Source: Octopus sinensis
Taxonomy: Eukaryota
DNA length: 64,000 nucleotides
NCBI RefSeq assembly: GCF_006345805.1
Contig: NC_043020.1
Span: 13,950,001-14,014,000, forward strand
Reading direction: 5' to 3'
In this document: positions 172-61,768 of the stretch, piece by piece
Layout: each line of letters starts with the position of its first letter
Position numbering within the stretch: the stretch's first letter is position 1
Made by a program: the position numbers and the translations under genes
Notes under the pieces: model-generated
What the model saw: only the letters and a program-made list of their open reading frames with translations
Database searches by the model: none
Told to the model about the DNA's origin: nothing

Positions 172-516
172 TATATATGCACACATGCACAAATATATAT
201 ATGCAACATCAACATATGTATAAACAAACTGTGTTAATCAATTAGGCATTAAAACAGAATGACTCTCCCTAGACAATAAAATATGCTTCAACACACGAAT
301 TCACTAAAGAATCTTGCATACCAAATACAAAATCTTATATCTGTTTTTAGAAGCATCGAAAGTGTATCATATTATATCCAATTTTCCCTGGTGTTTTCAT
401 GGCAATACTGCATTCAAAATATCATACTGTCTTATCTGTATAATATGATACACATTCGACATTTCTAAAACACAAATGTAAGTTTTTTTTAAATTTGAAG
501 GAGATTGTTGTCAGCA

Positions 517-586
517 GGCAGTTTAGCTTAATGGTAAAGTACTCAGCCAGTCTCTGAGAGATGTGGGTTCGAGTCCTGTGGCTGTT
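517..586 (+). pseudogene. Degenerate tRNA-like sequence (AGT anticodon, Thr-like) or SINE head
   Basis: A-box-like TAGCTTAATGG, B-box GGTTCGAGTCC, anticodon stem CTCAG/CTGAG with a 7-nt loop CCAGTCT. Acceptor and T stems pair poorly. Confidence 0.45.
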
Positions 587-684
587 TGTTGACAACTTTT
601 TCGGTCTTACAAGGGTAATAATACCCAATTTTTCCTGCTGCTTTTATAGCAATACTGTATTCAAAATATTACTTTCTGGTCTGT

Positions 685-1785: not shown

Positions 1786-2120
1786 ACTTATAAACAAGGG
1801 CAAAATAAAAAAATTCCTAATGCCAAATATACCGTAACATCGTCCATAACCATATAATTCATCACTATAAGTACATGTCTTGAAGAAAGCCGACAGAAAT
1901 TTCTAAAAAATTCCGTTATTACCACATCAGACCCAATTTCAGAGTTAGTCCATAAGAATCTTCTCTTCATCAGTGATAAATGCAGCAAAGGAATAAATGG
2001 AATACTTACTAATACCCATCGAGACATGTACTTATAGTGATGAATTATATGGTTATGGACGATGTCTAGTTTCAGCATATTTGGCATTAGAAATTTTTTC
2101 TTTTGCCCTTGTTTGTAAGT
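1786..2120. mobile_element. Inverted-repeat-flanked cassette carrying a hammerhead (Penelope-type remnant or MITE)
   Basis: Arms 1786-1880 and 2022-2120 are near reverse complements. The 141-nt spacer holds the hammerhead. It lies within the internal TA tract of a SINE. Confidence 0.7.
1926..1977 (-). ncRNA. Minimal type I hammerhead ribozyme motif
   Basis: Minus strand reads ATCA-CTGATGA-AGAG..CTCT-GAAA-TTGG-GTC-TGAT. Stem I ATCA/TGAT; GUC triplet at 1932-1930. Confidence 0.7.
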
Positions 2121-9329: not shown

Positions 9330-10461
9330 GTCGAGCAAATCGACCCCAGGACTTGTTCTTTGTAAGCCTAGTACTTATTCTATCAGTCTCTTTTTGCCGA
9401 ACTGCTAAGTTATGGGGACGCAAACACACCAGGAGCACCACCTTTAGTCGAGCAAATCGACCCCAGGACTTATTCTTTGTAAGCCTAGTACTTATTCTAT
9501 CGGTCTCCTTTTGCTGAATTGCTAAGTTACGGGGACGTAAACACTCCAGCATCGGTTGGTTGGCATTAGGAAGGGCATCCAGCCATAGAAACCATGCCAC
9601 AAAGACAACTGGAGCCTGGCCAACTCCATGTCAAACTGTCCAACCCATGCCAGCATGGAAAGCTGATGTTAAACGATGATGAAGCACTGCTCTAGTTGAA
9701 ATGAGTATCTACAGAGTACTAGTGCTACCCTTTCTCATTTCTTGGATGCTCTGTTGGGTTGGAGGGCTGAGAGGGCTACATGGGTACCTAAAACTATTTG
9801 TGAATCCATAGTACATGCTACCAACTGATGCACACCATTTACTAGTAATGACTGTAGTTGTAAGGGTCAAGTAAGATATGTTGTTTTTCTGAATATTTAA
9901 CCCTTTAGCATCTAAACTGGCCAAAAATATTCTGTTTTATGTTCAAACTAACCCTATCTGGTCTCTCACACCAACCCTACAATATCGTTTTAAAAATTAA
10001 CAGCTTCCTCATCAAAATCTCATAGCTACAAGATAATGCATGATTAATTCAAAAGTGGGCATGGCTGTGTGGTTAGGGAGCTTGCTTCCTAGCTACATGC
10101 GTGGCACTTTGGGTAGGTGTCTTCCACTATAGCCCCAAGCCGACTGAAGCTTTGTGATTGAATTCGGTAGGCGGAAGTTACTGCCGTGTGTGTATAGCTG
10201 TTCAGTGCCTCACCGAAAGAGAGAGAGGGATGATGATGTAGATGAAGAAGCATTAATTTTGGCAGAATAATGCGAACACAAAAGAGTTGAAGACATCAAT
10301 ATTCTTATGATCATCATATGGTATGCTATAGTAACAGTAACTTTAAACTGTAGGCTTTTGTATATTGAAGAAATATGAACAGAGTTCAGAAATGTAACTC
10401 TCTATTTCGTTGTATACCATGACCTGATGTATTTCATTTTTACCATTTTTCAATTCTTCAG

Positions 10462-10797: not shown

Positions 10798-12638
10798 ACT
10801 GATCTTGTTTAAAGTATTTTCACAGAATGTATCAAATATTCAATTTTTTTAGAAATTGTTGTTTTTATTATCTTCTCTAAAACTTGAGTGTAAACTTCAG
10901 TTTCTGTCAAACTAAGATCTGGTTTCCATTCCTACTCAGAACTATTCCGTTAATGTGGAATTTAAACTAGCCATATCTGACCAAAATGTTCTACCAATTT
11001 TATGTTCAAACTGACCAGATCCATCCTTTCATACTTACCCCACAATGTTAATCTTCAATATTTCCATTTCAAATAGTTTTTTTTCTACCTATATAGGCAC
11101 AGGTGTGGCAAGATTAATCTTCAATATTTCCATTTCAAACAGATTTTTTTTTTCTACCTATATAGGCACAGGTGTGGCTGTGTGATAAAAAGCTTGCTTT
11201 CTAACCACATGGTTCAGTTCTACTACATGGCACCTTGGACAAGTGTCTTCTACTATAGCCTCATACCAACCAAAGCCTTGTGAATGGATTTGGTTGATGG
11301 AAACTGGAAGAAGCCCGTTGATTTAGCTGATATTTCTGATGGTGTGTATTTAATTATCTATTATCATCTCTACATTGTCTCTGTTCGTTTACTGAGGATA
11401 TTGGGAGCGACTAAACAGACTGCTTTTGTCTATGTTGTTGCTGTTCAAGGTAATGTGGCCAAAGACGGCAAATAGAAGAGAGAATCAGAGCGAAAGGGTG
11501 ATGAAAGAGAGAGGGGTATGATGGGAGAAATAGTGAGAAAAGGATGATAGAAAATGATAGGAAGCTACAGGTTAGCTGAGGGAAAGATAAGCAAGAAGGT
11601 AGTCTATGAGTCTGGAGAGATTAAAAAAAAACAATAAACAATTCAGTGAACCCATCACTGTATCCAGTAATTACTTTTATTTACAAAACTAACGAAGCTT
11701 TTGATATGGTGTTCGGTGGGGTGAGAGCAATAATTCGGGTCTGGATAAGTTGGTTAAATTGTTTTTCTTTTTTTATGAAGAATAAAATTATTAAAAAAAA
11801 AAAATTAAAATTATAAAAAGAAAAGAAATAAACATTTCCCATGGTCCTTCATTGAACTATTAATATAAAAGAGAAAACTTAAGTGACAGTAGTTGATGAA
11901 ATGCATTCACTTAACCTTGTTTAACACAGTTTAACCGATATGAAGGACTCTTGCAGCCATGTAAAGTATTGCCAATATATGTTCGTTGTATTTCATAATT
12001 ATTTTCAAGTGACCTTAAATTCAAGCTTCCATAAAAATTCTCACAATACCCGAATGAAATGCAGAAAAACATTTTAGTTGCGTTTCACATGGTTCTGAAG
12101 CTCAGACGTGGTTATTTGTTTGAAATTTCTTCTTGTTTTATACTAAATATATCTCAAACTGGAGTCAAGTCCTGCTCTGAATGAAATGGTTTTGTGTATG
12201 TTAAAATAATAATACTTTCTGCTACAATATTTTTAAACACTTATATTTTAGATTTAGACGATTCATTAACATTTAATTCTAAGCTCATAAAATGTGTGTT
12301 TAAAATTAAGTTTATACTTGTTTTAAAAATCTACAAAAGATGTATTGATAAAATATACATATGCTCCGGCACATACACAGTCCAAGCTAGAATAAGTAAT
12401 CTGTCCATTAAAAGATTACGATATAACAAAAAATTCTTACAAAAGTATAAAAAAAAATTTTTCTTTCAAATTAAAGACGAAAAAAAAGTTTAAAATCCAG
12501 TTTCTTCTTCTCAAGGATTTTTTATTCTGCTGCGAACATTTTCAGGCTTGACTTCAACTAAACATTTCTGAGCTGGGAATTTTCTCTCTAATTTGGAACA
12601 GTCACAATTCATATTTTGATTGGCCTTTCTTTAAATTT

Positions 12639-12785
12639 CTAATTTCTTAAGTTAATAAATGGTTTGTTGCTACCATACGGTCTATTCATTCGTTTTTGCA
12701 GCAGTTTGTTATTGGAATCTTTTGGGTTCTTCACATGATAATGGTAGTCTACTCGCATACTCTGGAGGGCGTTAGTCATCTCTTC
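12639..12785 (-). CDS. MAPKAPK2: MAPKAPK2 terminal coding exon (EEMTNALQSMRVDYHYHVKNPKDSNNKLLQKRMNRPYGSNKPFINLRN*)
   Basis: aattacag acceptor, 49 codons ending in TAG at 12641-12639. EEMTxALxxMRVDY is the MK2/MK3 nuclear export motif. Confidence 0.92.
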   Translation of the reverse strand, partial: EEMTNALQSMRVDYHYHVKNPKDSNNKLLQKRMNRPYGSNKPFINLRN

Positions 12786-13298
12786 CTGTAATTACACAAA
12801 ACAATCATCTTAATTTTTTTCATTTATAAGGAAGACAAAATTTGTATAAATATTTCAGCTGAATGACTTGAATTCATCCAGCACATTTTTAAAGAGAAAT
12901 GGTAAATTCTGTTACTTAAGTCATGTGACTAGAACAGAAGACAGAAAAAAATACCAACTAAATCTTTCTACTTTTAGCATGAGGCTGGGAGGGGATGAGT
13001 TGATTACATCCACCCCCTACTTTATTTTATCGACCCCCAAAAGCGATGAGAGGCTAAGTCAGCACATAATGAGATAGAAAAATTACTCCTAATCAAAATG
13101 ATACATAATATAAAATTATTCCGTTTATATATTTGTTTTGCAAGATTCTTGATGTGAAATCGTGTGTTGAAACAGATATTGTTGTATTTCAGAATGGTCA
13201 TTTTGCCAGTTTAGCCAATAAAAACACACACACTATATATTTGGTGTTACTTTGCTTCAGTGTTGTTTATTTTTTTACATTAATCTTAATCTTATTTC

Positions 13299-13343
13299 GG
13301 CCAGAGTTCTTTCGTCACACTCCTGTGACCTCATCAGTGGTCC
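13299..13343 (-). ncRNA. Minimal type I hammerhead ribozyme motif with intact core, sense to the MAPKAPK2 last intron
   Basis: Minus strand reads GGACCA-CTGATGA-G-GTCAC-AGGAGT-GTGAC-GAAAG-AA-CTC-TGGCC. Stem II has 5 bp, stem I is CCA/TGG, and the cleavage triplet is CUC. Confidence 0.78.
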
Positions 13344-13937
13344 TTTGCTTTTTTATTTGTGTGTCTCGCCTTACTAATGGTCAGCCATTTTGTATTTCTA
13401 TTGTATGTGTCTTCATTTGCACACCTGTATATCTCTAGCTATTTTGACCTGTGCTTCACTCGGGGTTTTGGTAGTGGTGTTGTTTTGTGCGTGTTGTCTC
13501 CTTTTCCCTTTCTTCTTTTGTTCGTCTTCTTTGCCTTTCCCATATTCCTCACCACGGCAACCAAACGGTAGCCCCGAGTGACTTGCAACCCTTCTCACAC
13601 CATTGTGCACCCCTTTTTACCCCCCAGTGTAAATTTTGGTGCCAATCCGACCCCCATCTACCGCCCCATCCCAAAAAACCGTCCCCATCCCAAAATGAGA
13701 CGACCAAGAAATTAAACAACTTTTTTGTATTTCAACTTTATAGATATTGATTGGTTCTTGATTTTATCTACTTGGAGACAGAGTCCATTCTGTTACAAAC
13801 TTGGGGGGGGGGCTTTGTCCAGAAGATGACATCCTCCCTTCCTATTCCTAGTTTCAGAGGTCCTGAGAAAGGGGTAAAAATTCCTGCATCATTTTCATAT
13901 CGTTGACTAATAAAAATTAACCTGATTGACTTAATAA

Positions 13938-14291
13938 CACTGTGTAACACAATCTTTGTCTTTGACTAGCAACAGTTATTTCCTGTTTACTTATTCCTAG
14001 AAAGCATGAAGAATGGTTAACATTTCCTTCAAACTTTGCTTTCCTTACATTTATTCAAACCCCAAAGAATCCCTCTCAACACATGGCTATGATGCTCCCC
14101 CACTACTCCTGCTCACTGTGTAACACAATCTTTGTCTTTGAGTAGCAACTGTTATTTCCTGTTTACTTATTCCTAGAAAGCATGAAAAATGGTAAATATT
14201 TCCTTCAAACTTTGCTTTCCTTACGTTTATTCAAACCACAAACAATCCCTCTCAGCACATGGCTATGATGCTCCCCCACTACTCCTGCTCA
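13938..14291. repeat. Two-copy tandem duplication of about 177 bp overlapping a family D fragment
   Basis: CACTGTGTAACACAATCTTTG...CCACTACTCCTGCT occurs twice in tandem. Confidence 0.85.
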
Positions 14292-15108
14292 TGATCTGAG
14301 ATGCACATATTGTCAGCCACTAAGAGACATGCTCAAGTGGAACAGTCAAGCAACTGACAAGCAAATCTGTGGTATTGAGCAGAATATTTGCTATAATGAT
14401 ATTTCTGCTTCAGCAACTCAGTGCTGAATCTGTCTGAAATGTAATGGAAAATAGGTCAGTTTCAAGACATTGATGTCTGAATCAGAAAAGCAAAGTTTGA
14501 AGGGAATAGTAGTGATTTTCTTTGATTTCTAGATAGAAGCACAACCTTCGAACTTTAGGCCTCACTGAGGAAATGACCGGCGACCGAGACCTTTGGAAAT
14601 ATGCTGTACGTGAGAAGACCAGGCAGGACAAGTGAGCCCAGCCCACTTATGCATGCCTTTCCTCCCTTGGACACAAAGACCTGTTGAGGCACCAGCCTCA
14701 CCTGGCACCTGTGCCAGTGGCACGTAAAAAGTACCCACTACACTCACAGAGTGGTTGGCGTTAGGAAGGGCATCCAGCTGTAGAAACATTGCCAGATAAA
14801 ATTGGAGGCTGGTGCAGCCTTCTGGCTTCCCAGATCCCCCGGTCGAACCATCCAACCCATGCTAGCATGGAGAACGGACGTTAAATGATGATGATGATAG
14901 AAGCAAATAACACCTTACTAACCAAAGACTAAAAAATAAAAATTTTGTTACACAGAGTAATTAACTAGAATGGTCTTAGTAGTGTGTCTCAAAGAATTTA
15001 TGCTTCTGAAATTCTACAACTGAACAGTAAGCAAGAAAATATGCCAGTTTGACATATCAAAATTCGAAAATGGAATCTGTATGGTACTTATTAGTAAAAA
15101 ATCCTTAC

Positions 15109-15189
15109 CTGAACATCGTACCATTCTGAGGCATCATCTTGGAGGTTCATTATAGATAAAAGAGGAGTTGGCGGAACATCAACAACATT
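15109..15189 (-). CDS. MAPKAPK2: MAPKAPK2 exon (NVVDVPPTPLLSIMNLQDDASEWYDVQ)
   Basis: ttttcag acceptor and CAG|gtaagg donor, 81 nt. PxTPL corresponds to the p38 site equivalent to human T334. Confidence 0.92.
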
Positions 15190-16925
15190 CTGAAAATAAA
15201 CAAAGATTTAAAATATTAACCATTCTACAAGATTCTCACATTGAAAGAACTTTTCAAACAGGATATCTTTTCCTCCAAAATTCTTTTTTTCTTTTTTGAA
15301 GTTTACGTTGTGTTGTGTTGACAGATTTGCACTTAAAATTCCAGCATTTTTAATCAAAACTTGTTAGTTACTAAGGAGACAACTCTCTAACTCTCTCTCT
15401 CTCACTCACTCACTCACTCACACTCATTGTATTTCTCTCCTAACAACTTTTCTCCTCCTCTTCTTCCCTCTCTTTACACACATAGGCGCAGGAGTGGCTG
15501 TGTGTTAGGTACCTTGTTTACTAACCACATGGTTCCGGGTTCATTCCCACTGGGTGGCACCTTAGGCAAGTGTCTTCTACTATAGCCTCGGGCAGACCAA
15601 AGCCTTGTGAGTGAATTTGGTAGACGGAAACTGAAAAAAGCCCGTCGTGTATATGTTTGTGTGTCTGTCCACCCAACATCGCTTGACCAGCAAAAGATTT
15701 GGTTAAAAAGAGGCGATGGCTAGAAGGATATTGAGTTTTTCATAACCAGCTGATCTAGCAAATGGGGCCTCATATCAGTGAGGGGGGCCGGTGCGCATTG
15801 ATACCGTCGAGAGGTAGGCCCCGAAATGGCGCACATTCTCTCCTGATGACCCCATACACTTGCTGGTTTCCGGTATACGGAGCTTTTGACTGGTAGCACT
15901 TGCATGTGCAAGTTGTTTGCAAGACACCTAAGTACTAGGCTTCCAAAGAATAAGTCCTGGGGTCGATTTGCTCGACTAAAGGCGGTGCTCCAGCATGGCC
16001 GCAGTCAAATGACTGAAACAGGTAAAAGAGTAAAGAGAGAGAGAGAGATGTTGTTTCAGACAGACAGAAACCAGCTTCTCTTTTATAATATAAGATTAGA
16101 GAATGAGTGGTTCATCTGTCACAATTCCTGTTTTGTCGTGGAATTAGGATGAGTAAAGCTAGTGTCTTCTGAGACTACAACACAGCCACTGATGAAAACT
16201 CACTGAAATGGCCAACATCCCAAACATTAGATCATTCAAACACCTCATTAATATTATGTTGCCAGAAGCTACCAATAAACTACCTCAAGTGGGTACACTT
16301 TACTCTCTTTTACTTGTTTCAGTCATTTGACTGGTGGCCATGCTGGAGCACCGCCTTTAGTCAAGCAAATCGATCCCAGGACTTATTCTTTGTAAGCCTA
16401 GTACTTATTCTATCAGTCTCTTTTGCCGAACCGCTAAGTAACGGGGACATGAACACACCAGCATCGGTTGTCAAGCAATTCTAGGGGGACAAACACAGAC
16501 ACACACATATATATACATACATATATATGACAGGCTTCTTTCAGTTTCCGTCTACCAAATCCACTCAAAAGGCTTTGGTCGGCCCGAGGCTATAGTAAAA
16601 GACACTTGCCCAAAGTGCCACGCAGTGGGACTGAACTCGAACCATGTGGTTGGTTAGCAAGCTACTTACCACACAGCCACTCCTGCACCTGTGAAAGTAA
16701 TTTATATTTTTGGTAATGGATGTAAATTTAAGCACTATGTATGTTCCAGTTTTTACAATACATACATTATGTCTCTGTCTGTCTAAAGGGCAAATAAAAG
16801 AGCTGACATCTGGTCATAAACACAGATATAAAAGCATAGACAATAACGCTGATGATGATGATGGATCAGCAGAATCTCTGGAATTTTATTAAGAGTTAGG
16901 AAGATATTTTAAAAAAGTTACTTAC

Positions 16926-21672: not shown

Positions 21673-22787
21673 CATACATACATATATATGACGGGCTTCT
21701 TTCAGTTTCCGTCTACCAAATCCACTCACAACGCTTTGATCGGCCTGAGACTATAGTAGAAGACACTTGCCCAAGGTGCTACGCAGTGGGACTGAACCCA
21801 GAACCATGTGGTTGGAAAGCAAGCTACTTACCACACAGCCACTCCTGCGCCTATGTACTGGATGCTTTTTATGTGGCGCCATCACCAAGTGTTTTTTATG
21901 ACATCTATAATATCACTGCTAGAAATAGCAGTCAACTGACCTTAAAATCACATCACACTGTTATTTTTTTCTTTATTAGTTTCAGCTCAAAAGCTACAGC
22001 CATACTGGGGCAAAACATAAGCTACATTAAACAATGGAGCTCTAGAGACACTCTTCTTGAAGAAAAGTTGGGATGGTCACCTTTGACCATATGCCTGATA
22101 TATCAGTTCATACCTAATCTCTCAAAAAATAAGATCACAATATAGACATATATATAAGGTGCAGGCATGGCTGTGTGATAAGAAGCTTGTTTTTCAACCA
22201 CATGATTCTAGGTTCAATCCCCCTGTGTGGCACCTAAGACAAGTGTTTTGGGCCAACTAAAGCCTTGTGAGTGGATTTCATTGATGGAAACTGAAAAGAA
22301 CCTGTCGTGTGTGTGTGTGTGTCTGTGTTTGTCCCCCACCACCTCTTAACTGGTGTTGGTTTGTTTACATCCCTGTACCTTGGCAATTTGGCAAAAGAGA
22401 CTGATCAGATAAATACCAGATTTAAAAAGAAAATGAGTACAAGGGTTGATTAATTTGACTAAAATTCCTGAAGGTGATGCCCCAGCATGGCCATAGTCTA
22501 GTGACTGAGACAAGTAAAAGATAAAAGAAAAACGATATATTCGCTAGAAACAGTTGTAGTGAGAAGTGATTCATGTTTTGTACCAGATAATAATTTTGAG
22601 TTTTTCATTCAATTCTACTATAAAATAGTGTTTATATAATTTTCATGGTTCTTTGAAGTCAGACATCCTTATTCTAACCAAGACCTAATCAATATAATTT
22701 CTAGCCATAACAAGCTTTCATCATTAAATCCAACAATTAAACAGAATTACACATCAAAGTTAATTTGAGATAATTAGCAGCTTTTTT

Positions 22788-22834
22788 GTGTGTTTTTGCT
22801 ACACACATATATATATATATATACACATATATAC

Positions 22835-22866
<32 letters not shown>

Positions 22867-22896
22867 ACATATACATATATATATATATATATACAC

Positions 22897-22930
<34 letters not shown>

Positions 22931-23023
22931 CACATATATATATATATATATACACATATATATATATACACACATATATATACACACATATATACACACA
23001 CACATATACACACACACATATAT

Positions 23024-23054
<31 letters not shown>

Positions 23055-23090
23055 CACACATATATATACATACATATATATATACACACA

Positions 23091-23121
<31 letters not shown>

Positions 23122-23150
23122 CACACACACACACACACACACATATATAT
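22788..23150. repeat. Compound (TA)n/(CA)n microsatellite
   Basis: Low-complexity dinucleotide tract; source of the spurious YI/HT/CV ORFs. Confidence 0.97.
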
Positions 23151-23677
23151 TTTGTTATACAGGCCATGGTTGTTTCTGATGACTTTTCTGAATTGTTGAA
23201 ATATTTTTTTGTCTTTGGATTTCAGGAAAATAATATTGATTACCTGAAATCAGTATTGATGATGTTGATTATATTAACACACAGTAAGAGTTACACAATG
23301 ATGTTGAAATTCGTGGGTGGGGCTAGATTATTAGATGTATAGTGAGAATCAAACCTAATAAAGATACAAGTAGGTATTACCTAGGAAACAAGAATGACAC
23401 AGGCATGACCATGTGACTAACATGCTTGCCTGACAAGCATACAATTCCGGGTTCAGTTTGGTGGGGAGCACCTTGAACATGTGAATTCTACCACAGGCTC
23501 AAATTAGTGCTTGTAATGTTAAATATGTTTAAGATCACCATTTTTGTTGCCGTGTTTCTATTGAAATATGATGTCTTTATGCTTACTGTCCGTTTTTCGA
23601 CATCAGTGGCAGATGCCACTAGAAAAACTTATATATTTGCAAAGCAGCCTTCACTTTCATCGCGACCTGGTGGTTAC

Positions 23678-29918: not shown

Positions 29919-30665
29919 TTATCATTCTGTCGCAGTTATAAAAAAGTAAACAGGTGAACACTTTTTCCATATTTTGTTTGGTAAAAGTTAGCAATTGTTC
30001 TATTGCCAACAACACTTATTGACTGTCTGCTGCCACCAACGATTCGATGAAATTTTAAGACACAGACAATAATTTGATTATGATGATAATAATTTATCTC
30101 TTTATTGCCTACAGGGGGGGGGGGGGGCTAAGCATAGCGGGAACAAACAAGGACAGACAAAGGGATTAAGTTGATTACATCGACCCCAGTGTGTAACTGG
30201 TACTTATTTAATCGACCCCGAAAGGATGAAAGGCAAAGTCAACCTAGGCGGAATTTGAACTCTGAACGTAAAGACGGACGAGATACCTATTTCTTTACTA
30301 CCCACAAGGGGCTAAACACAGAGATGACAAACAAGGACAGACAAACGGATTAAGTGATTACATCGAACACAGTGCATAACTGGTACTTAATTTAATCGAC
30401 CCCAAAAAGGATGAAAGGCAAAGTCAACTTCGGTAGAATTTGAACTAAGAATGTAAAGACAGACGAAATACTGCTAATAATAGGCAATACAACCTAAACC
30501 ATTGCTTGAGTGTATATAAGTGAGTTATACAATCTTATGCATATTTCTCTTCCTCTCTCCATGTGTGTGTATATTATATGTGTGTGCATGAGTGTATAAG
30601 AAAATGAGATGACAAAGGATTAATGAATATGATGTACAACTTTTGAAACTGCACTTCCTATTCGA

Positions 30666-30746: not shown

Positions 30747-31544
30747 AATGAAGTTCATAACATAGTAACTTTATTCTTTTGTCATCTCGTTTTCTTATTA
30801 GCACTCTATAACTGACTAACACTTTATTCTGAAGCATATATATTTTGAATTCTACACCAGGTTTTATCAGTTTCACAATGCCTAATTCAAATATTAAATA
30901 TAGGTATTTTTTACTCTTTTACTTGTTTTACTGCAACCATGCTGGAGCACCACCTTTAGTCGAGCAAATCGGGACTTATTCTTTGTAAGCCCAGTACTTA
31001 TTCTATTGGTCTGTTTTGCCGAACCGCTAAGTGACGGGGACGTAAACACACCAGCATCGGTTGTTAAGCAATGTTAGGGGGACAAACACAGACACACAAA
31101 CATAGACACACACACATATATATGTATATATATACATATATACGACGGGCTTCTTTCAGTTTCCGTCTACCAAATCCACTCACAAGGCTTTGGTCGGCCC
31201 GAGGCTATAGTAGAAGACACTTGCCCAAGATGCCACGCAGTGGGACTGAACCTGGAACCATGTAGTTGGTAAGCAAGCTACTTACCACACAGCTACTCCT
31301 GCACCTATATATATATCATCCATCATCACCATTCAACATCAGTCTTCCATGCTGGCATGGGTTGAATATTTTGTCAGGAACTGATAAGCCAGAGGACTGT
31401 GCCTTGTCTATTGTTCAATGCATTTTAAATATTAAAAAGTTCCAACAACTAAATCTAATGATGCCTTTCAGTATTGACAGAAAGATTGTTGCAGGATTTC
31501 TACGAAGCTGGAATATGAAGAAATGAGTTTATGATGTTAACATC

Positions 31545-31985
31545 TACCTTTTACTACCACGTCTCCCACATGTCCGACACTCGCATCCCAAAACAGCTCT
31601 TCTACGGTGAACTCAGCCAGGGCAAACGCAAAGTCGGAGGGCAGAAGAAGCGCTTCAAGGAAAGTCTCAAGGTCTCTCTCAAAGACTTCTCCATCGGCAC
31701 AGAGACCTGGGAGACACTTGCTGCCGACCGCTCACCCTGGTGCAGCGCAATCACCACAGGAGCAGGGACAGCCGAGGAGGGACGGATTCGGTCAGCAGAG
31801 CAGAAACACCAGATGCGGAAAGCCAGAGCCGCCTGCACCAGTAGCACGGCCCCTACCCACTTCTGCCCCACCTGTGGGAGGGGCTTCCTTGCCCGGATTG
31901 GCCTCACCAGCCACCTCCGGTCTCATGGCGGCAGTTCCACCAGATGATGTCAGTGGTAATCTTCGAACCCGAAGGACAAACATTA
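31545..31985 (+). mobile_element. RTE (BovB-like) LINE 3' end with terminal C2H2 finger
   Basis: MSDTRIPKQLFYGELSQGKRKVGGQKKRFKESLK...W...CPTCGRGFLARIGLTSHLRSH is the canonical RTE C-terminus; GC-rich relative to the flanks. Confidence 0.9.
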
Positions 31986-34926: not shown

Positions 34927-36499
34927 CCTCCATCTTTATGTTCTGAGGTCAAATTCCACCAAGGTCAAATTTGCATTTCATCCCTTTTGGGAATGAACTA
35001 CATCAACCTCAGCTTAATTGACTTACACCTTCCCTCAGAATTGCTGGCCTTGTTTTAAAATTTGAAATCAATATTTTATCAATTTTTATTTTTTGTGAAC
35101 TGTTAAGTTACAGAACATTATGAATCACAGCATAATATTAAACAGGGTGCAAAAACAGTCATTGCCACAGGTTCTCTCTATTGAATACCTATATCTTTAC
35201 TACCCACAAGGGGCTAAACACAGAGAGGACAAACAAGGACAGAAAAACAGATTAAGTCGATTATATCAACCCCAGGGCGTAACTGGTACTTATTTAATCG
35301 ACCCCGAAAGGATGAAAGGTAAAGTCGACCTCGGTGGAATTTGAACTCAGAATGTAGCGGCAGACGAAGTACTGTTAAGCATTTTGCCCGGCGCAGTAAC
35401 GATTCTGCCAGCTTGAATACCATGTGATGAATAAGCTAATGAGAGAGCCTGTAGAAGGCAGATCATTCTGCAAGAAATAACAGGCAACTCTTCCTCAAAG
35501 CACAACTTTACCATATAACAAAAAAAAAGCAGGACACATTTGATAGTGTGGTATCAGTTAAACTGTATTTGACTGACTAAAAGAGAGGATGGTCATGGCA
35601 GGAAGGCCTTTGATGATGAGGTTGTTTAACCAGAGTTCACACAGCCACTAAACCAGCACTGCATTGTGCTTACTATTACATACTGCAATAGGGTGGTGGG
35701 CTGGCAGAATTGTTAGCATGCCAGGCAAAACACTTAGTGGCATTTTGTCTACCTTGACGTTCTGAGTTCAAATTCTGCCAAGGTCATCTTTGCCTTTCAT
35801 CCTTTTTGGGTCAATAAAATAAAACACCAGTTTCACACTGGGGTCGATGTAACCAACTAGCTACCCCGCCCCAACAAATTCAGGCCTTGTGCCTATAGTA
35901 GAAAGGATTATTACATGCTGCAATTAAGGCTGCGAGATGGCAGAATCATTAGCATGCCAGGCAAAATGCTTAATAGCATTTCGTCCGTATTTATGTTCTG
36001 AGTTCAAACTCCACCAAGGTTGACTTTGCCTTTCATCCTTTTTGGGGTTGATAAAATAAATACCAGTTGAGTAGTGGGGTCAATCTAATTGACCTATCCC
36101 ACCCCCAAATTGCTGGCCTTGTGCTAAAACTTGAAAGCATTATTACATAATGCAACCTCAATTCTGCTGACGTGGACTTTACCTTTCATCCTTTTTGGGG
36201 AGTCAACTAAATAAGTACCAGTTGAGCACCAGGGATCAATGTAATTTATTAGCCTCACACCCAAAGTTTCTAGCCTTGTGCCTATAATATAAAGGATTAT
36301 TACATACTGCTACTTCACACAGAACCTGTTGCTGCCGCAGCTGTAAGTGTTTACTCAAAAATAAACATGACTCAATGTTTACTTTTGAGTGAGTATTATT
36401 AGATTTACATGATCTAAACCAGTTGAGATTATGATAATGTAGTGAACAGAATTATTATTATTAGAGATAATAATAATGATAATAATAATAATGGTTTTT

Positions 36500-36670: not shown

Positions 36671-37188
36671 GTCTTGATGCAGTACCAGGCAGTGGCTCTC
36701 ATGGAAGTGTTATCATGTACATTGTTTTGTCTTGGTATAAAAGATGGGCTACAGCAAATATTCTGCTCAATACCACAGATTTGCTTGTCTGTTGCTTGAT
36801 CTTGACCAGTTGAGCATGTCCATTAGTGGCTGACGATATGTGCATCTCTGATCATGAGCAGAAGTAGTGGAGGAGCCATGTGTCGAGAGGAATTCTTTGG
36901 GGTTTGAATAATTCACATCTGGAAACATGGGTTCATCATCCTTAAATAAACCTTATTCAGGGACCTTTTGAGTGGGATGGGCTACTCAACCTGAAGAAAA
37001 TTCAAACTGGGCCCCACCTGCAAGGTCATGTGCTGTTTATCTTGATATGAGATCACCATGTCGCGCACATATGGTTGTGATGCATGTGCCTGGTGTACCT
37101 TTATCAGACGGGTAGTCATGATGGGTATATTGGGCTTCGTATATTTTACCCCAGTGTCACTTTGATGGCATGAACTGCTCTCTCACTC

Positions 37189-37219: not shown

Positions 37220-38375
37220 TGGCAGAGGATTAATTAACATAGACCATTGTATAATGAGTGAAAGGAAAATGCTTGCCAAGTATTTGATAAATAGTGATGA
37301 AGTCTGCTGCAATATGCCACAAAAGACATGGGTGTAGATGCAGATGAAATGATGGGCAAGGCAAAGTATAACCAAAGAACTGAGAAGAGAAAAGAAGACC
37401 TTTTTGAAATGAGAATGAATGGGCAGTTTGAAATACACAAGACGTTAAGGATAATACAGCATTGTGGGTATGGTTTAAGCAAGGTGATTTGAAGCATACC
37501 ACTGAATCATCATCATCATTGTTCGACCGTGGTCGAGACAATGGAATTTACTATGCTACGCCAGACTTCACGGTCCATCATAGCATTACGGAGGTCCTGT
37601 TGCTGGATGCCTGTATCCCTGGAGATTACATCAGGGTAGGAGAGTGAAAGCTGCACAAGACTAGGCTCTCACTACCAATTCAATGAAGTATAGCATCAAT
37701 AAAACTTCTGACACCCAGAAATGCAGACTCTGTCGAAAGAGTATGGAAAATGTGACCCACTTGGTAAGTGGATGTGAGAGCCTTGCACAGAAAGAATACA
37801 AGCGCCGCCACGATAAAGTGTGTGTGTATCTTCACTGTCTCTTATGCTGTAAATGCCAATATGAAGTAACAGAGAACTGGTATGAGCATGTACTGAGTAA
37901 AGTTATGCAGGGGGATGGAAAAGTAATGATACTCTGGGACTATGATTTTCAGACGGGTCGTGTAATCAAACACCGTCAGCCGGATATTGTCATATTGAAT
38001 AAGAGAGACAGATACAGTCAGATCGTTGATATAGCCATACCAAATGACATGAATGTTGTGAGTAAAGAGGTTGAAAATATCACCAAGTACTCCAAATTGA
38101 AAGTGGAGATGGCAAAACTGTATGGAATGTGAGAGGGTAATGTAAAAGTGATACCAGTGGTGATTGAAGCAGTGGGGCCAATCCCATTGAAACTTCAAGA
38201 CTTCTTAAGGCAACTGGAAATCCCATGCAAGATTAATGTCTTGCAAAAAGCAGCTTTATTGGACGCAGTGCACATCTTAAGGGAAGTATTATCAGTCTGA
38301 GGTCCTTGTTGTAACTTAATAGATGACTAAAGACTCAGGTGAATTTTTACCTACACTATGTTACGAAGGAAAAAT
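37215..38375 (+). mobile_element. R4/Dong-clade non-LTR retrotransposon 3' part (CCHC knuckle and restriction-like endonuclease), decayed
   Basis: KCRLC..SMENVTHLVSGC...EYKRRHD..V and RQPDIVI...IVDIAIP...KY motifs. (TAA)n on both sides; interrupted by an RTE 3' end at about 37505-37670 on minus. Confidence 0.85.
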
Positions 38376-41504: not shown

Positions 41505-42050
41505 TGTTAGCCGCTCTCCAGCCATCTATTTAAAACTATATACAGCTATGGTACGACCACACTTGGAATTCGCATCATCAGTTTGGAACCTCTATCTTGC
41601 TCAGAACAATGACCTCCTGGAATCTGTCCAGAGACGTGCAACCAAACGCATACCCTCCATCAGACACCTACCATATTCTGAGCGCCTTGTTTCCCTGGGC
41701 ATGGATTCACTGAAGCTCCGGCGTCTGGCGACGGACTTGGTAAACACCCACAAAGTTGTCAACCACCTCACCAATAACAACACTGAACACCTTTTTGATC
41801 TCCATGTGTCTAACACACGTGGACATGCCTACAAAGTCAGAAAACAACACAGCTCTCATGACTTTCGGAAACATTTTTTCACGCTCAGAGTTGCTGAAGC
41901 ATGGAATAAACTGCTTGCGTCAGTTGTTGACTGCCATGACACTGCATCCTTTAAGGCCCTCATGCTTTCCGAAATCCGCTGAAACTACACCTGATTATAT
42001 ATACACTTTAGATGAGTTGTAGTGCACCTGAGCACTGTACACAATGGAAG
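41505..42050 (+). mobile_element. CR1-group LINE ORF2 3' end
   Basis: YTAMVRPHLEFASSVWN...LESVQRRATK...RGH..K.RK....FFT.RV...WNKL motifs in an uninterrupted 144-aa frame. Confidence 0.9.
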
Positions 42051-43204: not shown

Positions 43205-43654
43205 AAGATGTAGGTTTAAATGTGATGATGACGAGGATTATGATGACAATGACGGTAATGATGATGTCAATGATGACGATGATGATGAAAGGTGATGCTG
43301 ATGACTTGTGATGATGATGACGAGAAGGAAGCTGTTAATGATGATGATGATGAGAAGGTGGAGGAAGAGGAGGAGGGTGAGGATGATGATGATGAGGAGG
43401 AGGAGGAAGAGGGTGAGGATGATGAGGATGATGATGAGGAAGAGGATGATGAGGAGGAGGAGGAGGAAAAGGATGAGGATGATGATGAGGAAGAGGATGA
43501 TGATGAGGAGGAGGAGGAAAAGGATGAGGAGGAGGAGGGTGAGGATGATGAGAATGATGATGAGGAAGAGGATGATGATGAGGAGGAAGAGGATGATGAT
43601 GAGGAGGAAGAGGAGGATGGTGATGATGATGATGAGGAGGAGGAAGCCTTTTAA
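43205..43654. repeat. Purine-rich cryptic (GAT)/(GAG) trinucleotide tract
   Basis: Translates as poly-Asp/Glu in one frame; no splice context seen. Confidence 0.9.
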
Positions 43655-44353
43655 GAAAACATCTCGAATGTTTTTAAACAATAATTAACCAATTCCGTTA
43701 TACAATAACAACAACAACAACAGAGGCAGCAGAAAGCGTTCATATATTGAACATGTTATTACTGATAATCAATATGGATTTCTAAAATAGGTTCACCAAC
43801 TTCAAATGTACTGACCCCACTATTTGATTGGTATGTTACCGATACTTAGCTGGTATGTTATTCTATCAACCTCCAGAAAGATTAAAAAAACTCAAGCTGA
43901 TTCTCGTAGGATTTGAACTCTGGATGTCAGTAACCATAACTAAAAACTGGTGATAGCAATAATAATGATCCTTTCTATTATAGGCACAAGGCCAGAAATT
44001 TTAGGGGAGGGGACTAGTCAATTACCTTGAATCCAGTGTTTCACTAGGACTTAATTTATAGACCCTGAAAGAATGAAAAGCAAAGTCGACCTCGGTGGAA
44101 TTTGAACTCAGAACGTAGTGATGCACGAAATGCTGCTAAGCATTCTGCCAGCTCACCGCAAGGAGGAGGAGGAGGAGGAAGAAGCAGAAGGAGGAGGAGG
44201 AGGAGAAGAAGAAAGGGAGGAAGAAGAAGAAGAGAAAGAAGAAGAAGAAGTGAAAGAAGAAGAGGAATAATAATAATAGTAATAATAATAATAATAGTAA
44301 TAATAATAGTAATAATAATAATAATAGTAATAGTAATAATAGTAATAATAATA

Positions 44354-46268: not shown

Positions 46269-46969
46269 TAAGACTATCTGACTCATACACTGTTCACTTC
46301 CCAGACATTTGTACATTAAGCCACATGCTTTATATGCACTTTTGACAAGTTGTGGTGCACCTGAGCACTGTATACAATAATTTCATTATATATAAAACAC
46401 TCAGTAGATAAGCATACTGCCCAACGACATGGTCCTGAGTTCAATCTCACTGCGTGGTATCTTGGGCAAGTGCTTTCTACTATAGCCTCGGGTCAACCAA
46501 AGCCTTGTGAGTGGATTTGGCAGAAGGAAACTGAAAGAAGCCCATCATCATCATCACTTAACATCCGTTGTCCATGCTGGCATGGGTTGGATGGTTTGAC
46601 CAGAGCTGGCAAGCTGCACTAGACTCCAGTCTGATTTGGCATGGCGTCTATGGCTGGATGCCCTTCCTAATGCCAACCACTTTCAACTAGTCCCCTCTCT
46701 GCAAATTTCAGGCCTTGTACTTTTAGAATCATTAACATGCTGGACTAAATTCTAAGCGGCATCCCATCCATCTTTACGTTCTGAGTTCAAATTCCACCGA
46801 AGTTGATGTTGCCTTTCATCCTTTTGGGGTTGATAACATTAGTACCAGTTAAGTACTGAGTACCAGTTAAGTACTGTACCAGTTAGTACCAGTTAAGTAT
46901 TGAAGTACACCCTCCCCCAAAACTGCTGGCCTTGCGCCAAAATTTGAAATCATTATCATTATTATTATT

Positions 46970-47260
46970 AAGGTAGTGTAAATATGGTGGAATTCACCTG
47001 CCATTTTATTTATTCCTCCAGGCTGAGATGTCAACAGTTCACAAATATATATCTCCTCATAGGTTTTGAGGACTGAAAGTGCAGTGAAGTAAGGATATTT
47101 TTTGAGAATGTGCACACTCAAGTCTTTCTCAAATTTACACCCGTTTGATGGTAAATGCTCCGCAAGTCCCTTGGAACCACTGCTTTTGTGCCTGATTTTG
47201 TACCTGTGTCTGTTAAATCTTTTTTGCAATCTTTCTGTTGTGCAGCTAACATAAATCATA
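46970..47260 (-). mobile_element. Penelope-like element GIY-YIG endonuclease fragment
   Basis: IYVSCTTERLQKRFNRHR...LAEH...LSVHIL...YEEIYICELLTSQPGGIN matches the PLE GIY-YIG C-terminal pattern. Confidence 0.75.
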
Positions 47261-49673
47261 TACTGTATACACCAAATGAGAATCCTTACATGTCCCTCCT
47301 TTTGTGCAAATCATAACATTTCTGTTATAATTCTTGATGGAATTGGTCTAAGGTAGCGAGCTAGCAGAATTGTTACCACAGTGGCGAAAAAGGCGGAGAG
47401 CTGGCAGAAACGCTAGCATGCCAGGCAAAATGCTTAGCGGCATTTTGCCTGCCGCTACATTCTGAGTTCAAATTCCACTGAGGTCGACTTTGCCATTCAT
47501 CCTTTCGGGGTCAATTAAATAAGTACTAGTTACGCACTGGGGTAGATGCAATCGACTTAATCCGTTTGTCTGCCCTTGTTTGTCCCCTCTGTGTGTAGCC
47601 CCTTGTGGGCAGTAAAGAAATAAGAATTGTTACCACACTGGGAAAATAGCTTAGCAACATTTTTTCTGACTTTACATTCTGAGTTCAAATGTCACTAGGG
47701 TTGACTTTGCCTTTTATCCTTTCGGGGTCAATAAAATAAGTATCAATTGAGCACTGGGGTCAATGTAATCAACTAGCCCCCACTCCCTGAAAATTTCAGG
47801 CCTTGTGCCTATAGTAGAAAGGATTATTATTATAATTATCATCCTGCATGTGTAAGCGAAAGTAGGGTATTGCAATCACTTGTCTTTGTCTGTGTGTTTG
47901 CAAAATTACTGGAAAACGACCAAATAGATTTTCACCAAATTTGGCAGCAATACTCATTGGGTGAGTGGCTTGAAATGATGAAAATTTGGTTTGATTATCT
48001 TCAAACGTACATAAATACATACCTATATAGGTGACTCTGTGTGTGTGAATGTGTGTGTACAGTAAAAGATTTGAGGGTTTCATTTATTTTGAGTTGATTT
48101 CTTAATTTCACTGGAGTATGAATACCTATAATGATGATACTTACAAAAAAAAGAAAATTGCCATTTTTTCATCATTGTTGTTGTTGTTGTTATGGGTATT
48201 ATTATTATTATTATTATTATTATTGAGTGGCTGTGTGGTAAGTAGCTTGCTTACAAACCACATGGTTCTGGGTTCAGTCCCACTGCGTGGCAGTTTGGGC
48301 AAGTGTCTTCTACTATAGCCTTGGCCGACCAAAGCCTTGTGAGTGGATTTGATAGACAAAAACTGAAAGAAGCCCGTCGTATATATGTATGTGTGTGTAT
48401 ATATTTGTCGCCCCAACATCGCTTGACAACTGATGGTGTGTTTTTACATCCCCATAACTTAGCGGTTCGGCAAAAGAGACCAATAGAATAAGTACTAGGC
48501 TTACAAAGAATAAGTCCTGGGGAGACTTGCTTGACTAAAAGGTGGAGCACGGCCACAGTCAAATGACTGAAACAAGTAAAATAGTAAAAGAGAAAGATAG
48601 TAATAGCGGCAAGGTGACAGAATCATTAGTGCACCAGGAAAAATGCTTAGTGGCATTTCTTCCAACTTTATATTCTGAATTCAAATGTCGCCAGGGTCGA
48701 CTTTGCTTTTTATCTTTTCAGAGTCAATAAAATAAGTACCAGTTGAATACTGGGGTCAATGTCATTGATTTAACCCCTCCCTTAAATGACTAGCCCTGAG
48801 TCAAAATTTGAAAATATTATTATTGTCGGCGCTATTGTTTTTGTTGTTGTTTGTTGTTTTCGTAAGAGATAAAAATCAAAGACAATCCTCTCTGTAAAGA
48901 TATCAAAAAATAGAAAACTAAAAAGTCTATGAATGCCAGTGTCAATGGCAGATCTTATCTACGGATTTTGAAATATTAAACAAATGACTAACAACAAATA
49001 CGTTTTGTAGATAAACTTGAGATGTCTGTCCCTCTTCTATTAAAGTAGACTGAAGCATTTAAACTCCTGCAGTATGATATGAACTTATAATTTATCAACA
49101 CACAATAACTTGGGTTTCAGCCATAATTAGCATCGGGCTAATGATGATGATGATGACAACAATGATTCCTGAGAGAATTAGGTATTTAAATGATATGCTC
49201 CATGTAGGGTTGGATTAACCTGTAGTCACCACCTATAGGTTAATTACGTATCCAGTAGAATGTTCAGATTTTCCATGCTCAGCTTTGGCTAGCTTCAGGC
49301 ATGTTCACCCTGGTTGCACCAGTCTCCAATCTTGATTTGGCAGAGTTTCTACAGCTGGGTGCTTTTTATGTGCCACCGGCACGAGGGCCAGTCAGACGGT
49401 ACTGGCAACGACCTCGCTCGAATCCTTTTACACATGCCACCAGCACAGGTGCCACTAAGGCGACTTTGGTAACGATCACGCTCGAATGGTGCCCTTTTAC
49501 CTGCCACTGGCATGGAAGCCAGTTGTCTGCTCTGGCAACGATCACGCTGGGATGGTGCTCTTGGCACCCTACTAGTGCCAGTAAGGCGATGCTGGTAACG
49601 ATCACACTCGAATGGTGCCCTTTAAATGCCACTGTGTTCTTGGGATATTCTCCAATTGTTTTGAAATTATACG

Positions 49674-50217: not shown

Positions 50218-50753
50218 CAGGGTGTCCCAAAAAAATGTATACACATGCTGCAACAGTCTGTCATGCCAAGCCTTAGAGAGGACTTTGAACAGGAAGAGTT
50301 TTATTTCCAGCAAGATGGGGCACCTCCACACTACCATCGCGATGTTAGATCCTTTCTTGATGGGATCTTGCCAAACAGGTGGATTGGACGGAGAAGTTTT
50401 GTCGAATACCCTCAACGTTCACTAGACCTCACACCACTAGACTTCTTTTTATGGGGATACCTAAAGGACAAAGTCTACGCACAGAAACCTGCAACAGTCA
50501 TTCAATTGAGGGCAACCATTGAACATGAATGTACGAATATCCCAAGGGAATTGTTCCATGATGTGTGCCATTCCATCGCTTTGCATTGTCAGCAGTGTCT
50601 GGAGCAGAACGGACATCAGTTTGAGAACATGCGATAACAAGACAATAGAATGATATTTGTAAATTCTTTTACATGTTGAAAATTATTCGAATTATAATAA
50701 ACCCCAAATTTACAATTATTTAAGGTGTGTATACATTTTTTTGGGACACCCTG
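50218..50753 (+). mobile_element. Internally deleted Tc1/mariner element, 536 bp, with perfect 28-bp TIRs and TA TSD
   Basis: TIR CAGGGTGTCCCAAAAAAATGTATACACA at both ends. ORF carries FQQDGAPPHY and SLDLTPLDFFLWGYLKDKVY. Confidence 0.93.
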
Positions 50754-61084: not shown

Positions 61085-61768
61085 TATGTTTGACTTTTGC
61101 TTTATAGTTGTACAAGTTGGCTCCAAGTCTCACCCAGAGACCTCAAGAGACAACAGGTTGGAAGTTCATGTTGTTGTTATGTCTAGTGTGCCATATATTT
61201 GGGGGGTTTTTTTTAGTGTTGTATTAGTAAATGTCTAAAAAAAAAAACATACAAAAATTATGTTTGTTTTAAAACTTGAGATTACATAGAAAGTATTTTG
61301 CATAGGATATGAGCAGTTCCCATGAGCACTATCTTTTGAATTTCTGCCATTTTGGGGTTTCCTGGTATCGGAGTTAGGTAGCAATCAGCCCCTTTTGTTA
61401 TCATTCCCAGGGCACCTATGACAACAGGTATTGTTTTAGTCTTCAGGTTCCACATTTTGCTGATTTCTATTTCAAGATCTTTATATTTGCTCAGTTTTTG
61501 GTAGGTCTTGACAGATACGTTTATATCGATTGGGACAGTCATATCAATGAGGAGGCATGTTCTTTGTTTGAAATCTTTCAATATGATGTCTGGCCTATTT
61601 GCATCTATCTTTCTGTCAGTTTGAATGGGGAAGTTCCAGAGGAGTGAGATGTGGTCATTTTCAAGCACTGGGGGTGGTTTGTGTTCCCACCAGTTTTTTT
61701 CATGGGGCAAATCCAGGTTTTTGCAGATTACCCAGCAAATATATTGTGCAGCTCTATCATGCCTGTTG
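61085..61768 (-). mobile_element. R4/Dong-clade non-LTR retrotransposon 3' end inserted in (TAA)n
   Basis: LWNFPIQTDRKIDANRPDIIL...LLIDMTVP...KLSKYKDL...IPVVIGALG (PD-D/ExK RLE domain); TAA repeats on both sides. Confidence 0.88.

What the first reader, a model, noticed from the sequence alone, without database searches (positions are those of the whole stretch)
13299..13343. Intact-core hammerhead on the sense strand of the last MAPKAPK2 intron
The minus strand reads GGACCA CUGAUGA G GUCAC-AGGAGU-GUGAC GAAAG AA CUC/ UGGCC. All catalytic core bases are present, stem II has five Watson-Crick pairs, and the predicted cut falls between 13304 and 13303. It sits about 510 nt upstream of the terminal-exon acceptor (12786) and is transcribed within the MK2 pre-mRNA. 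Cleavage before splicing could uncouple the kinase exons from the exon encoding the NES and docking tail. Intronic hammerheads are known in amniote genes; activity here is inference, and the very short stem III suggests slow cleavage unless dimerised.
Basis: partly seen in the sequence, partly recalled or inferred. Interest (0 to 1): 0.7.

Follow-up and report, generated by a model that had tools for sequence, protein, structure and literature searches.

The report
Solitary minimal hammerhead motif in intron
The hammerhead-like string really is in the last intron of an MK2-type kinase gene, but it is a stripped-down, single-copy version of the kind scattered by Penelope-like retroelements (or thrown up by chance), it is unlikely to cut itself at a useful rate, and nothing here indicates that it regulates the gene.

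Summary
The sequence is exactly as quoted: minus strand 13343-13299, complete hammerhead core, predicted cut 13304|13303, 517 nt upstream of the terminal-exon acceptor of an MK2/MK3-type kinase gene. The functional reading is not supported. No Rfam hammerhead family matches, even at E<=10. Helix I is 3+2 bp with a bulge and has no loop for tertiary contacts. An unpaired G sits between A9 and stem II. Helix III is 2 bp around a 2-nt loop. With 50-200 nt of flanking intron only 0.2-0.4% of the folding ensemble forms stems I and II. The non-palindromic helix III cannot form a dimer (+0.7 kcal/mol). There is no second copy in 64 kb. Chance gives about 0.005 such motifs per window, roughly 200 per 2.5-Gb genome. 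The anatomy matches the published 'min-HHR' of Penelope-like retroelements: thousands of dispersed single copies in animal genomes, with no detectable cleavage as monomers. Penelope elements are abundant in octopus genomes. Best reading: an inert retroelement relic (~0.5), otherwise a chance motif (~0.38); a regulatory ribozyme is about 0.05. Conservation in other octopods and genome-wide copy number could not be tested, because no cephalopod genome was reachable with these tools.

The parts
13338..13343 (-). Helix I, 5' strand GGACCA (A13341 bulged)
   Evidence: Direct reading. It pairs with 13303-13299 in the MFE of the 45-mer and the 76-mer.
13331..13337 (-). Core box CUGAUGA (C3-A9)
   Evidence: Direct reading. 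It is the only CUGANGA...hairpin...GAAA arrangement with stem II >=5 bp in the window.
13330..13330 (-). Unpaired G between A9 and stem II (or a bulge after G10.1)
   Evidence: Direct reading. My strict descriptor without an insertion missed this register, and it was found with ins=1. An unpaired nucleotide at this place is a published hallmark of PLE min-HHRs (PMC4209133).
13314..13329 (-). Helix II hairpin GUCACA-GGAG-UGUGAC (6 bp, G10.1-C11.1 closing pair, 4-nt loop)
   Evidence: MFE and centroid keep this hairpin.
13311..13313 (-). Core G12 A13 A14
   Evidence: Direct reading.
13305..13310 (-). Vestigial helix III: A15.1 G15.2 A A C16.2 U16.1 (2 bp around a 2-nt loop; not palindromic)
   Evidence: Direct reading. 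The self-duplex of this segment is unstable at +0.7 kcal/mol.
13303..13304 (-). Predicted scissile bond C17 (13304) | U1.1 (13303)
   Evidence: Follows from the standard hammerhead numbering applied. Not tested experimentally.
13299..13303 (-). Helix I, 3' strand UGGCC
   Evidence: It can alternatively pair with GGUCA of helix II.
12786..15108 (-). Last intron of the MK2/MK3-type kinase gene (donor CAG|gtaaga at about 15108; acceptor ttacag| ending at 12786)
   Evidence: Exon peptides align to human MAPKAPK2.
12639..12785 (-). Terminal coding exon (EEMTNALQSMRVDY...NKLLQKRMNR...stop), encoding the NES and basic docking tail
15109..15189 (-). Penultimate coding exon (NVVDVPPTPLLSIMNLQDDASEWYDVQ); boundaries approximate

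Best explanation
A solitary 'minimal' type I hammerhead motif of the kind carried in the terminal repeats of Penelope-like retroelements (PLEs) and scattered by them through animal genomes. It was most likely left in this intron by an old, truncated retroelement insertion. In the parent element, two copies in tandem are thought to pair through their short palindromic helix III segments and form a weakly active double hammerhead that processes the element's own RNA (published model). Here there is one copy, its helix III is not self-complementary, helix I is short and has no tertiary-contact loop, and the surrounding intron offers more stable competing folds. The inferred outcome is that the motif is transcribed within the MK2 pre-mRNA, essentially does not cleave, and is removed with the intron lariat without affecting the mRNA. 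Shown: the sequence anatomy, the gene context, the lack of a partner copy, and the thermodynamics. Inferred: the PLE origin and the lack of activity.
For: [quoted passage not shown] A descriptor requiring these features gave 0 hits over 1889 permuted-core decoys and 0 in 40 Mb of simulated sequence. The permissive descriptor gave 8 and 4 hits on the same two tests. The same paper reports thousands of such motifs per metazoan genome, mostly as dispersed single copies in non-coding DNA (also PMC7761336). Penelope elements are among the abundant repeat families of octopus genomes (PMC13282606; PMC8967140). For inactivity: the single min-HHR tested in that paper (from S. mansoni) showed no detectable self-cleavage in vitro, and dimers cleaved only weakly; the hammerhead-compatible fold is 14-16% of the ensemble in isolation and 0.2-0.4% with 50-200 nt flanks; the helix III self-duplex is +0.7 kcal/mol; there is no second copy in the window.
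Against: No PLE sequence was recognised around the motif. A six-frame translation of 12790-13900 found no homologues, and there is no convincing target-site duplication. Loop 3 (AA) is not palindromic, although palindromy is one of the published hallmarks. The PLE-like descriptor was written after seeing the candidate. If it dates from the old PLE expansion (JC distance about 0.2), a fully intact core would be uncommon. Whether octopus PLEs carry this particular min-HHR family, and how many copies exist, could not be checked because no cephalopod genome or repeat library was reachable.
Confidence: 0.5

Rival explanations
1. Pure chance: a CUGAUGA heptamer, a small 6-bp inverted repeat and a GAAA happen to lie in hammerhead order in AT-rich intronic DNA. 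There is no ribozyme ancestry and no activity.
For: No Rfam hammerhead hit even at E<=10. Folding energy is no better than shuffles (z = -0.30 for the 45-mer, about -1.6 in context). No related copy and no transposon hallmarks nearby. A second, weaker true-core look-alike at about 1973-1918 (-) shows that such things occur in this same window.
Against: The specific combination of an extra nucleotide after A9, G10.1-C11.1, a 6-bp helix II and <=4 nt in helix III was not seen in any of 1889 decoy cores. It coincides with a published natural class that is abundant in genomes carrying PLEs.
Confidence: 0.38
2. One reading: a functional, domesticated intronic hammerhead that cleaves the MK2 pre-mRNA before the last intron is spliced, lowering full-length mRNA or yielding transcripts that lack the NES/docking-tail exon.
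For: Complete core on the sense strand of the intron. Precedents exist for conserved intronic self-cleaving ribozymes: amniote RECK/CTCL/DTNB hammerheads (PMC6155905) and the CPEB3 HDV-like ribozyme, which modulates its host mRNA (PMC10919898). Domestication of retroelement hammerheads has been proposed.
Against: It lacks the loop-loop tertiary contacts that give natural hammerheads activity at physiological Mg2+. Helix III is vestigial and cannot dimerise. The hammerhead fold is <0.5% of the ensemble in intron context. The one monomeric min-HHR of this architecture that was assayed showed no detectable cleavage. Slow ribozymes in introns do not affect splicing, and the acceptor is only 517 nt downstream, seconds of transcription at the polymerase rates quoted there for mammals. 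No conservation evidence is available.
Confidence: 0.05
3. Part of an active non-LTR retrozyme (a tandem repeat with type I hammerheads) that produces small circular RNAs.
For: Molluscs (mussel) carry thousands of retrozyme hammerheads (PMC7229834). A 176-nt tandem duplication lies about 600 nt away in the same intron.
Against: The candidate is not inside any tandem repeat. The 176-nt duplication contains no hammerhead core on either strand. There is no second hammerhead within the window to delimit a unit.
Confidence: 0.02

Closest known systems
Minimal hammerheads (min-HHR) of Penelope-like retroelements (Cervera & de la Pena 2014, PMC4209133)
   Same: Type I topology, complete core, an unpaired nucleotide between A9 and G10.1, a G10.1-C11.1 pair, a long helix II (6 bp), a short helix I (5 bp) without a recognisable loop 1, and a vestigial helix III. 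Occurrence as a dispersed single copy in non-coding DNA of an invertebrate genome rich in Penelope elements.
   Different: It has four nucleotides (GAAC) between A15.1 and U16.1, and the central AA is not palindromic, so the dimeric helix III of the published model cannot form. No PLE terminal repeat, RT or GIY-YIG sequence was recognised next to it. Family membership by sequence could not be tested.
Amniote intronic hammerheads (RECK, CTCL/C10orf118, DTNB; Rfam HH9/HH10 families)
   Same: A type I hammerhead motif on the sense strand of an intron of a protein-coding gene, proposed to derive from retroelement hammerheads.
   Different: Those are canonical motifs with a 6-bp helix I, a 4-bp helix II and conserved loop 1-loop 2 tertiary contacts, and they are ultraconserved across species. 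The candidate has none of these features, gets no Rfam hit, and its conservation is unknown.
Amphibian satellite/retrozyme hammerheads (newt; axolotl HHR_Amex1)
   Same: Very weak helix III (1-2 bp). Poor cleavage as a monomer is expected (6% in one hour for the axolotl monomer).
   Different: The amphibian motifs sit in 330-350-bp tandem repeats, have a palindromic loop 3 that allows an active dimer, and keep the loop-loop contacts. The candidate is single-copy, non-palindromic, and lacks the contacts.
CPEB3 intronic HDV-like ribozyme
   Different: It is a different ribozyme class. CPEB3 is conserved, has a measured half-life of about 2-3 min, and lies about 9.9 kb upstream of the next exon. 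The candidate is 517 nt from its acceptor and has no evidence of activity.

Membership tests
Hammerhead ribozyme (general consensus) | Conserved core C3 U4 G5 A6 N7 G8 A9 ... G12 A13 A14 ... A15.1-U16.1, H17, flanked by three helices | tested here: met
   Direct reading of 13343-13299 (-), with the qualification of an inserted G after A9 and a helix III of only 2 bp around a 2-nt loop.
Hammerhead ribozyme (general consensus) | Site-specific self-cleavage 3' of H17 | not testable with these tools
   Needs in vitro transcription or RNA-end mapping. Thermodynamic proxies are unfavourable.
Canonical type I hammerheads as curated in Rfam (type I, HH9, HH10; also types II and III) | Covariance-model score at or above the family's gathering threshold | tested here: not met
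   No hammerhead hit at gathering over the whole window, nor at E<=10 over 701 nt or 76 nt.
Canonical metazoan type I hammerheads / amniote intronic hammerheads | Helix I of about 6 bp with loop 1, and helix II of about 4 bp with loop 2, making conserved tertiary contacts | tested here: not met
   Helix I is 3 bp + bulge + 2 bp and the flanks do not extend it. Helix II is 6 bp with loop GGAG. Criteria are from PMC4209133 and PMC7229834.
Amniote intronic hammerheads | Conservation at the orthologous intron across species | not testable with these tools
   No cephalopod genomic sequence could be retrieved.
PLE-type minimal hammerhead (min-HHR) | [quoted passage not shown] | tested here: met
   G13330. 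Criterion.
PLE-type minimal hammerhead (min-HHR) | Conserved G10.1-C11.1 pair; large helix II (6-8 bp); short helix I (4-5 bp) | tested here: met
   G13329-C13314; 6-bp helix II; 5-bp helix I with one bulge. Criteria.
PLE-type minimal hammerhead (min-HHR) | Helix III absent or tiny, with palindromic 15.2-16.2 and loop 3 so that two copies can form a dimeric helix III | tested here: inconclusive
   15.2-16.2 (G-C) is complementary, but loop AA is not palindromic. The self-duplex is +0.7 kcal/mol, against -6.4 for AGAUCU, which is one substitution away.
PLE-type minimal hammerhead (min-HHR) | Belongs to a genome-wide consensus family with covariation and/or lies in a PLE terminal repeat | not testable with these tools
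   No second copy within the window and no RT/EN homology nearby.
Non-LTR retrozyme | Type I hammerhead inside a 170-400-bp tandem repeat | tested here: not met
   The candidate is outside any tandem repeat. The neighbouring 176-nt duplication has no hammerhead core.

The most novel reading that the evidence does not exclude
A Penelope-derived minimal hammerhead has been domesticated in the last intron of octopus MK2. With help from a host factor, or from a trans-acting partner RNA that supplies helix III, it cleaves a fraction of nascent transcripts before the tail exon is spliced on. This would tune the level of full-length MK2 or generate a kinase lacking its nuclear-export signal and p38-docking tail.
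Probability: 0.03. Interest if true: 0.7.

Novelty: new member of a known kind. Interest (0 to 1): 0.15.

Why it matters
If the functional reading were true, it would be the first intronic self-cleaving ribozyme shown to shape a signalling kinase in an invertebrate, and it would extend ribozyme domestication beyond amniotes. As things stand, it matters mainly as a caution. Complete hammerhead cores with weak helices arise by chance about 200 times in a genome of this size, and retroelements scatter them in far larger numbers. A core match inside a gene is therefore not evidence of regulation unless there is also conservation, tertiary-contact loops or measured cleavage.

Tried and rejected
(1) Orthologous intron retrieval. 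Joined kinase-exon peptides found only short fragments, <=82% identical, with no cephalopod protein. An exact look-up of the terminal-exon ORF found nothing on record. A composite six-frame translation of 12790-13900 gave no hit. So conservation could not be assessed.

(2) Reaching PLE copies through an ORF at 46870-47310 (-) that looked GIY-YIG-like by eye. There was no Pfam match, no homologue and no adjacent RT. I do not claim it is a PLE.

(3) Exact-pattern scans of JGI metagenome and IMG/VR contigs with the core plus stem II gave 0 matches.

(4) Target-site duplication. The only repeat abutting the motif (AAGCAAAG..., 12/14, spacing 93 nt) is of a size found about five times per 700 nt here, so I rejected it as evidence.

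(5) The 176-nt tandem duplication at 13938-14291 as a retrozyme: it has no hammerhead core on either strand.

(6) An alternative register using the downstream GAAA (13298-13295), with stem II GGUCA/UGGCC, has no helix I and was rejected. It does show that UGGCC has a competing partner.

(7) Literature. Lunse et al. 2017 on dimeric PLE hammerheads and the supplements of the two PLE papers are not held. The 2001 study of the extra nucleotide after A9 is only cited, not held. My recollection that a G at that position is poorly tolerated is therefore unverified and is not used as evidence.

Full report
**1. The observation**

The minus strand from 13343 to 13299 reads GGACCA-CUGAUGA-G-GUCACA-GGAG-UGUGAC-GAA-AGAACU-C|UGGCC. 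In standard hammerhead numbering:

- C3-A9 = 13337-13331
- G12-A14 = 13313-13311
- A15.1 = 13310, U16.1 = 13305, C17 = 13304
- The predicted cut lies between 13304 and 13303.

The MFE and centroid structures of the 45-mer and of a 76-mer both keep stems I and II.

Three deviations matter:

- An unpaired G (13330) separates A9 from stem II. My strict descriptor without an insertion therefore missed this register, and the motif is found only when one inserted base is allowed.
- Stem III is A-U and G-C around a 2-nt loop, which in practice is one pair closing GAAC.
- Stem I is 3 bp, a bulged A, then 2 bp, and the flanks do not extend it.

**2. Gene context**

Exon peptides on the minus strand:

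| Approx. position | Peptide |
|---|---|
| 50.9 kb | HRDIK |
| 29.9 kb | [10 protein letters not shown] |
| 27.7 kb | [11 protein letters not shown]...[12 protein letters not shown] |
| 19.7 kb | [12 protein letters not shown] |
| 17.0 kb | LLKTDPDERLTIRDVMSNPWV |
| 15189-15109 | NVVDVPPTPLLSIMNLQDDASEWYDVQ |
| 12785-12639 | EEMTNALQSMRVDY...NKLLQKRMNR...stop |

Joined together, they align end to end with human MAPKAPK2 (E = 4e-92), through the nuclear-export signal and the basic tail, with MAPKAPK3 a close second. The acceptor ttacag| ends at 12786. The candidate therefore lies in the last coding intron (about 15108-12786), on the sense strand, 517 nt upstream of the acceptor.

**3. Is it more than chance?**

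- The true core scores one hit in the window.
- 1889 permuted-core decoys score 8 hits in total, or 0.0042 per core per window.
- 40 Mb of second-order Markov sequence gives 4 hits, or 0.0064 per window.

That is unusual for a single window, but it implies roughly 165-250 chance instances in a 2.5-Gb genome. A second, weaker true-core look-alike sits at about 1973-1918 (-) in this same window and folds differently. The 45-mer is no more stable than its shuffles (z = -0.30), and longer contexts reach only z of about -1.6.

**4. Comparison with curated hammerheads**

Rfam gives no hammerhead match at gathering thresholds over the window. It also gives none at E <= 10 over 701 nt or 76 nt. The canonical metazoan type I motif has a helix I of about 6 bp and a helix II of about 4 bp, whose loops make tertiary contacts. 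The candidate does not have that anatomy.

**5. What it does resemble**

Cervera and de la Pena (2014) describe 'min-HHRs' in the terminal repeats of Penelope-like elements:

- type I topology
- helix II of 6-8 bp
- a conserved G10.1-C11.1 pair
- helix III absent, or tiny and palindromic

They report thousands per metazoan genome, mostly as dispersed single motifs interpreted as truncated PLEs (see also PMC7761336).

The candidate has the extra nucleotide, the G-C pair, a 6-bp helix II, a 5-bp helix I and a vestigial helix III with complementary 15.2-16.2. A descriptor demanding these features gave 0 hits among 1889 decoy cores and 0 in 40 Mb of simulation. That descriptor was defined after the fact. 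Penelope elements are among the abundant repeat families of octopus genomes (PMC13282606; PMC8967140).

Against this reading:

- Loop 3 (AA) is not palindromic.
- No PLE coding or repeat sequence is recognisable nearby.
- There is no convincing target-site duplication.
- I could not test whether related copies exist elsewhere in the genome.

**6. Would it work?**

- **Folding in context.** A constrained partition function puts the hammerhead stems I and II at 14-16% of the ensemble for the isolated motif. With 50-200 nt of flanking intron this drops to 0.2-0.4%.
- **Dimerisation.** The GAAAGAACUC self-duplex is +0.7 kcal/mol, against -6.4 for the palindromic variant AGAUCU. No partner copy exists anywhere in the 64 kb.
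- **Published activity.** The single min-HHR tested (from S. mansoni) showed no detectable self-cleavage, and dimers cleaved weakly, mostly at non-physiological Mg2+. An axolotl monomer with a weak helix III cleaved 6% in an hour.
- **Kinetics.** Synthetic ribozymes in introns disturb splicing only when they are fast. Slow ones have no effect (Fong et al. 2009, as summarised in PMC10919898). Here the acceptor is only 517 nt downstream, a few seconds of transcription at the polymerase rates quoted there for mammals.

All of this argues against the uncoupling mechanism. None of it is a direct activity test.

**7. Other possibilities checked**

- The 176-nt tandem duplication at 13938-14291 in the same intron is not a retrozyme. 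It has no hammerhead core on either strand, and its 3' third is a dispersed repeat.
- An ORF at 46870-47310 (-) looked like a GIY-YIG endonuclease by eye, but it has no Pfam or homologue support.
- Scans of metagenome and viral contigs with the core plus stem II found nothing.

**8. Verdict**

The string is real and correctly placed. The claim that it regulates MK2 is unsupported.

| Reading | Estimated probability |
|---|---|
| Inert, solitary PLE-type minimal hammerhead relic | ~0.5 |
| Chance motif | ~0.38 |
| Functional intronic ribozyme | ~0.05 |
| Retrozyme unit | ~0.02 |

The decisive missing data are genome-wide copy number, repeat annotation, and conservation in the orthologous intron of other octopods. 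None of these was reachable with the collections available here. A simple in vitro cleavage assay is also missing.

Noticed in passing
window 1918-1980 (-): A second CUGAUGA...GAAA...UC arrangement with a 4-bp stem II (A-U closing pair, 18-nt loop) and a possible 5-bp helix I. It folds differently and is no better than shuffles (z = 0.25). It is a chance look-alike that illustrates the background rate.
   Followed up: yes
window 13938-14291: A 176-nt unit duplicated in tandem (94-95% identity) in the same intron. Its last ~62 nt recur at 62151-62211 (97%) and 36857-36911 (81%), so part of it is a dispersed repeat. It has no hammerhead core.
   Followed up: yes
window 13018-13061 and at least 12 other sites (e.g. 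30384-30426, 36021-36060, 59450-59489): A short (~40-85 nt) dispersed repeat with many copies on both strands of the window, 250 nt from the candidate. Probably a fragment of an abundant SINE-like element. Not classified.
   Followed up: no
window 516-588 (+): tRNA-Thr (AGU) called by ARAGORN, and an Rfam tRNA hit of 37.9 bits. It could be a genuine tRNA gene or the head of a tRNA-derived SINE.
   Followed up: partly
window 46870-47310 (-): An open frame (…IYVSCTTERLQKRFNRHRYKI…ICELLTSQPGGINK…) that looks like a GIY-YIG endonuclease of a Penelope-like element by eye. No Pfam match at E<=0.01, no homologues found, and no adjacent reverse transcriptase.
   Followed up: partly
window 10098-10176, 11211-11318, 15536-15660 and inverted copy 16515-16639: A ~110-125-nt repeat family present in direct and inverted orientation (75-89% identity) within the last two introns of the kinase gene. 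Another dispersed element; not classified.
   Followed up: no
window 31531-31947 (+), 37683-38132 (+), 41548-41982 (+), 50245-50637 (+), 61282-61710 (-): Several 130-150-aa ORFs inside the kinase gene's large introns that look like retrotransposon or transposase fragments by eye. None reached a significant Pfam match at E<=0.01.
   Followed up: partly
window 22774-23342 and 43238-43688: Long microsatellite or low-complexity tracts (TG/TA-rich; GAT/GAA-rich) that generate spurious ORFs of 120-180 aa in several frames.
   Followed up: no
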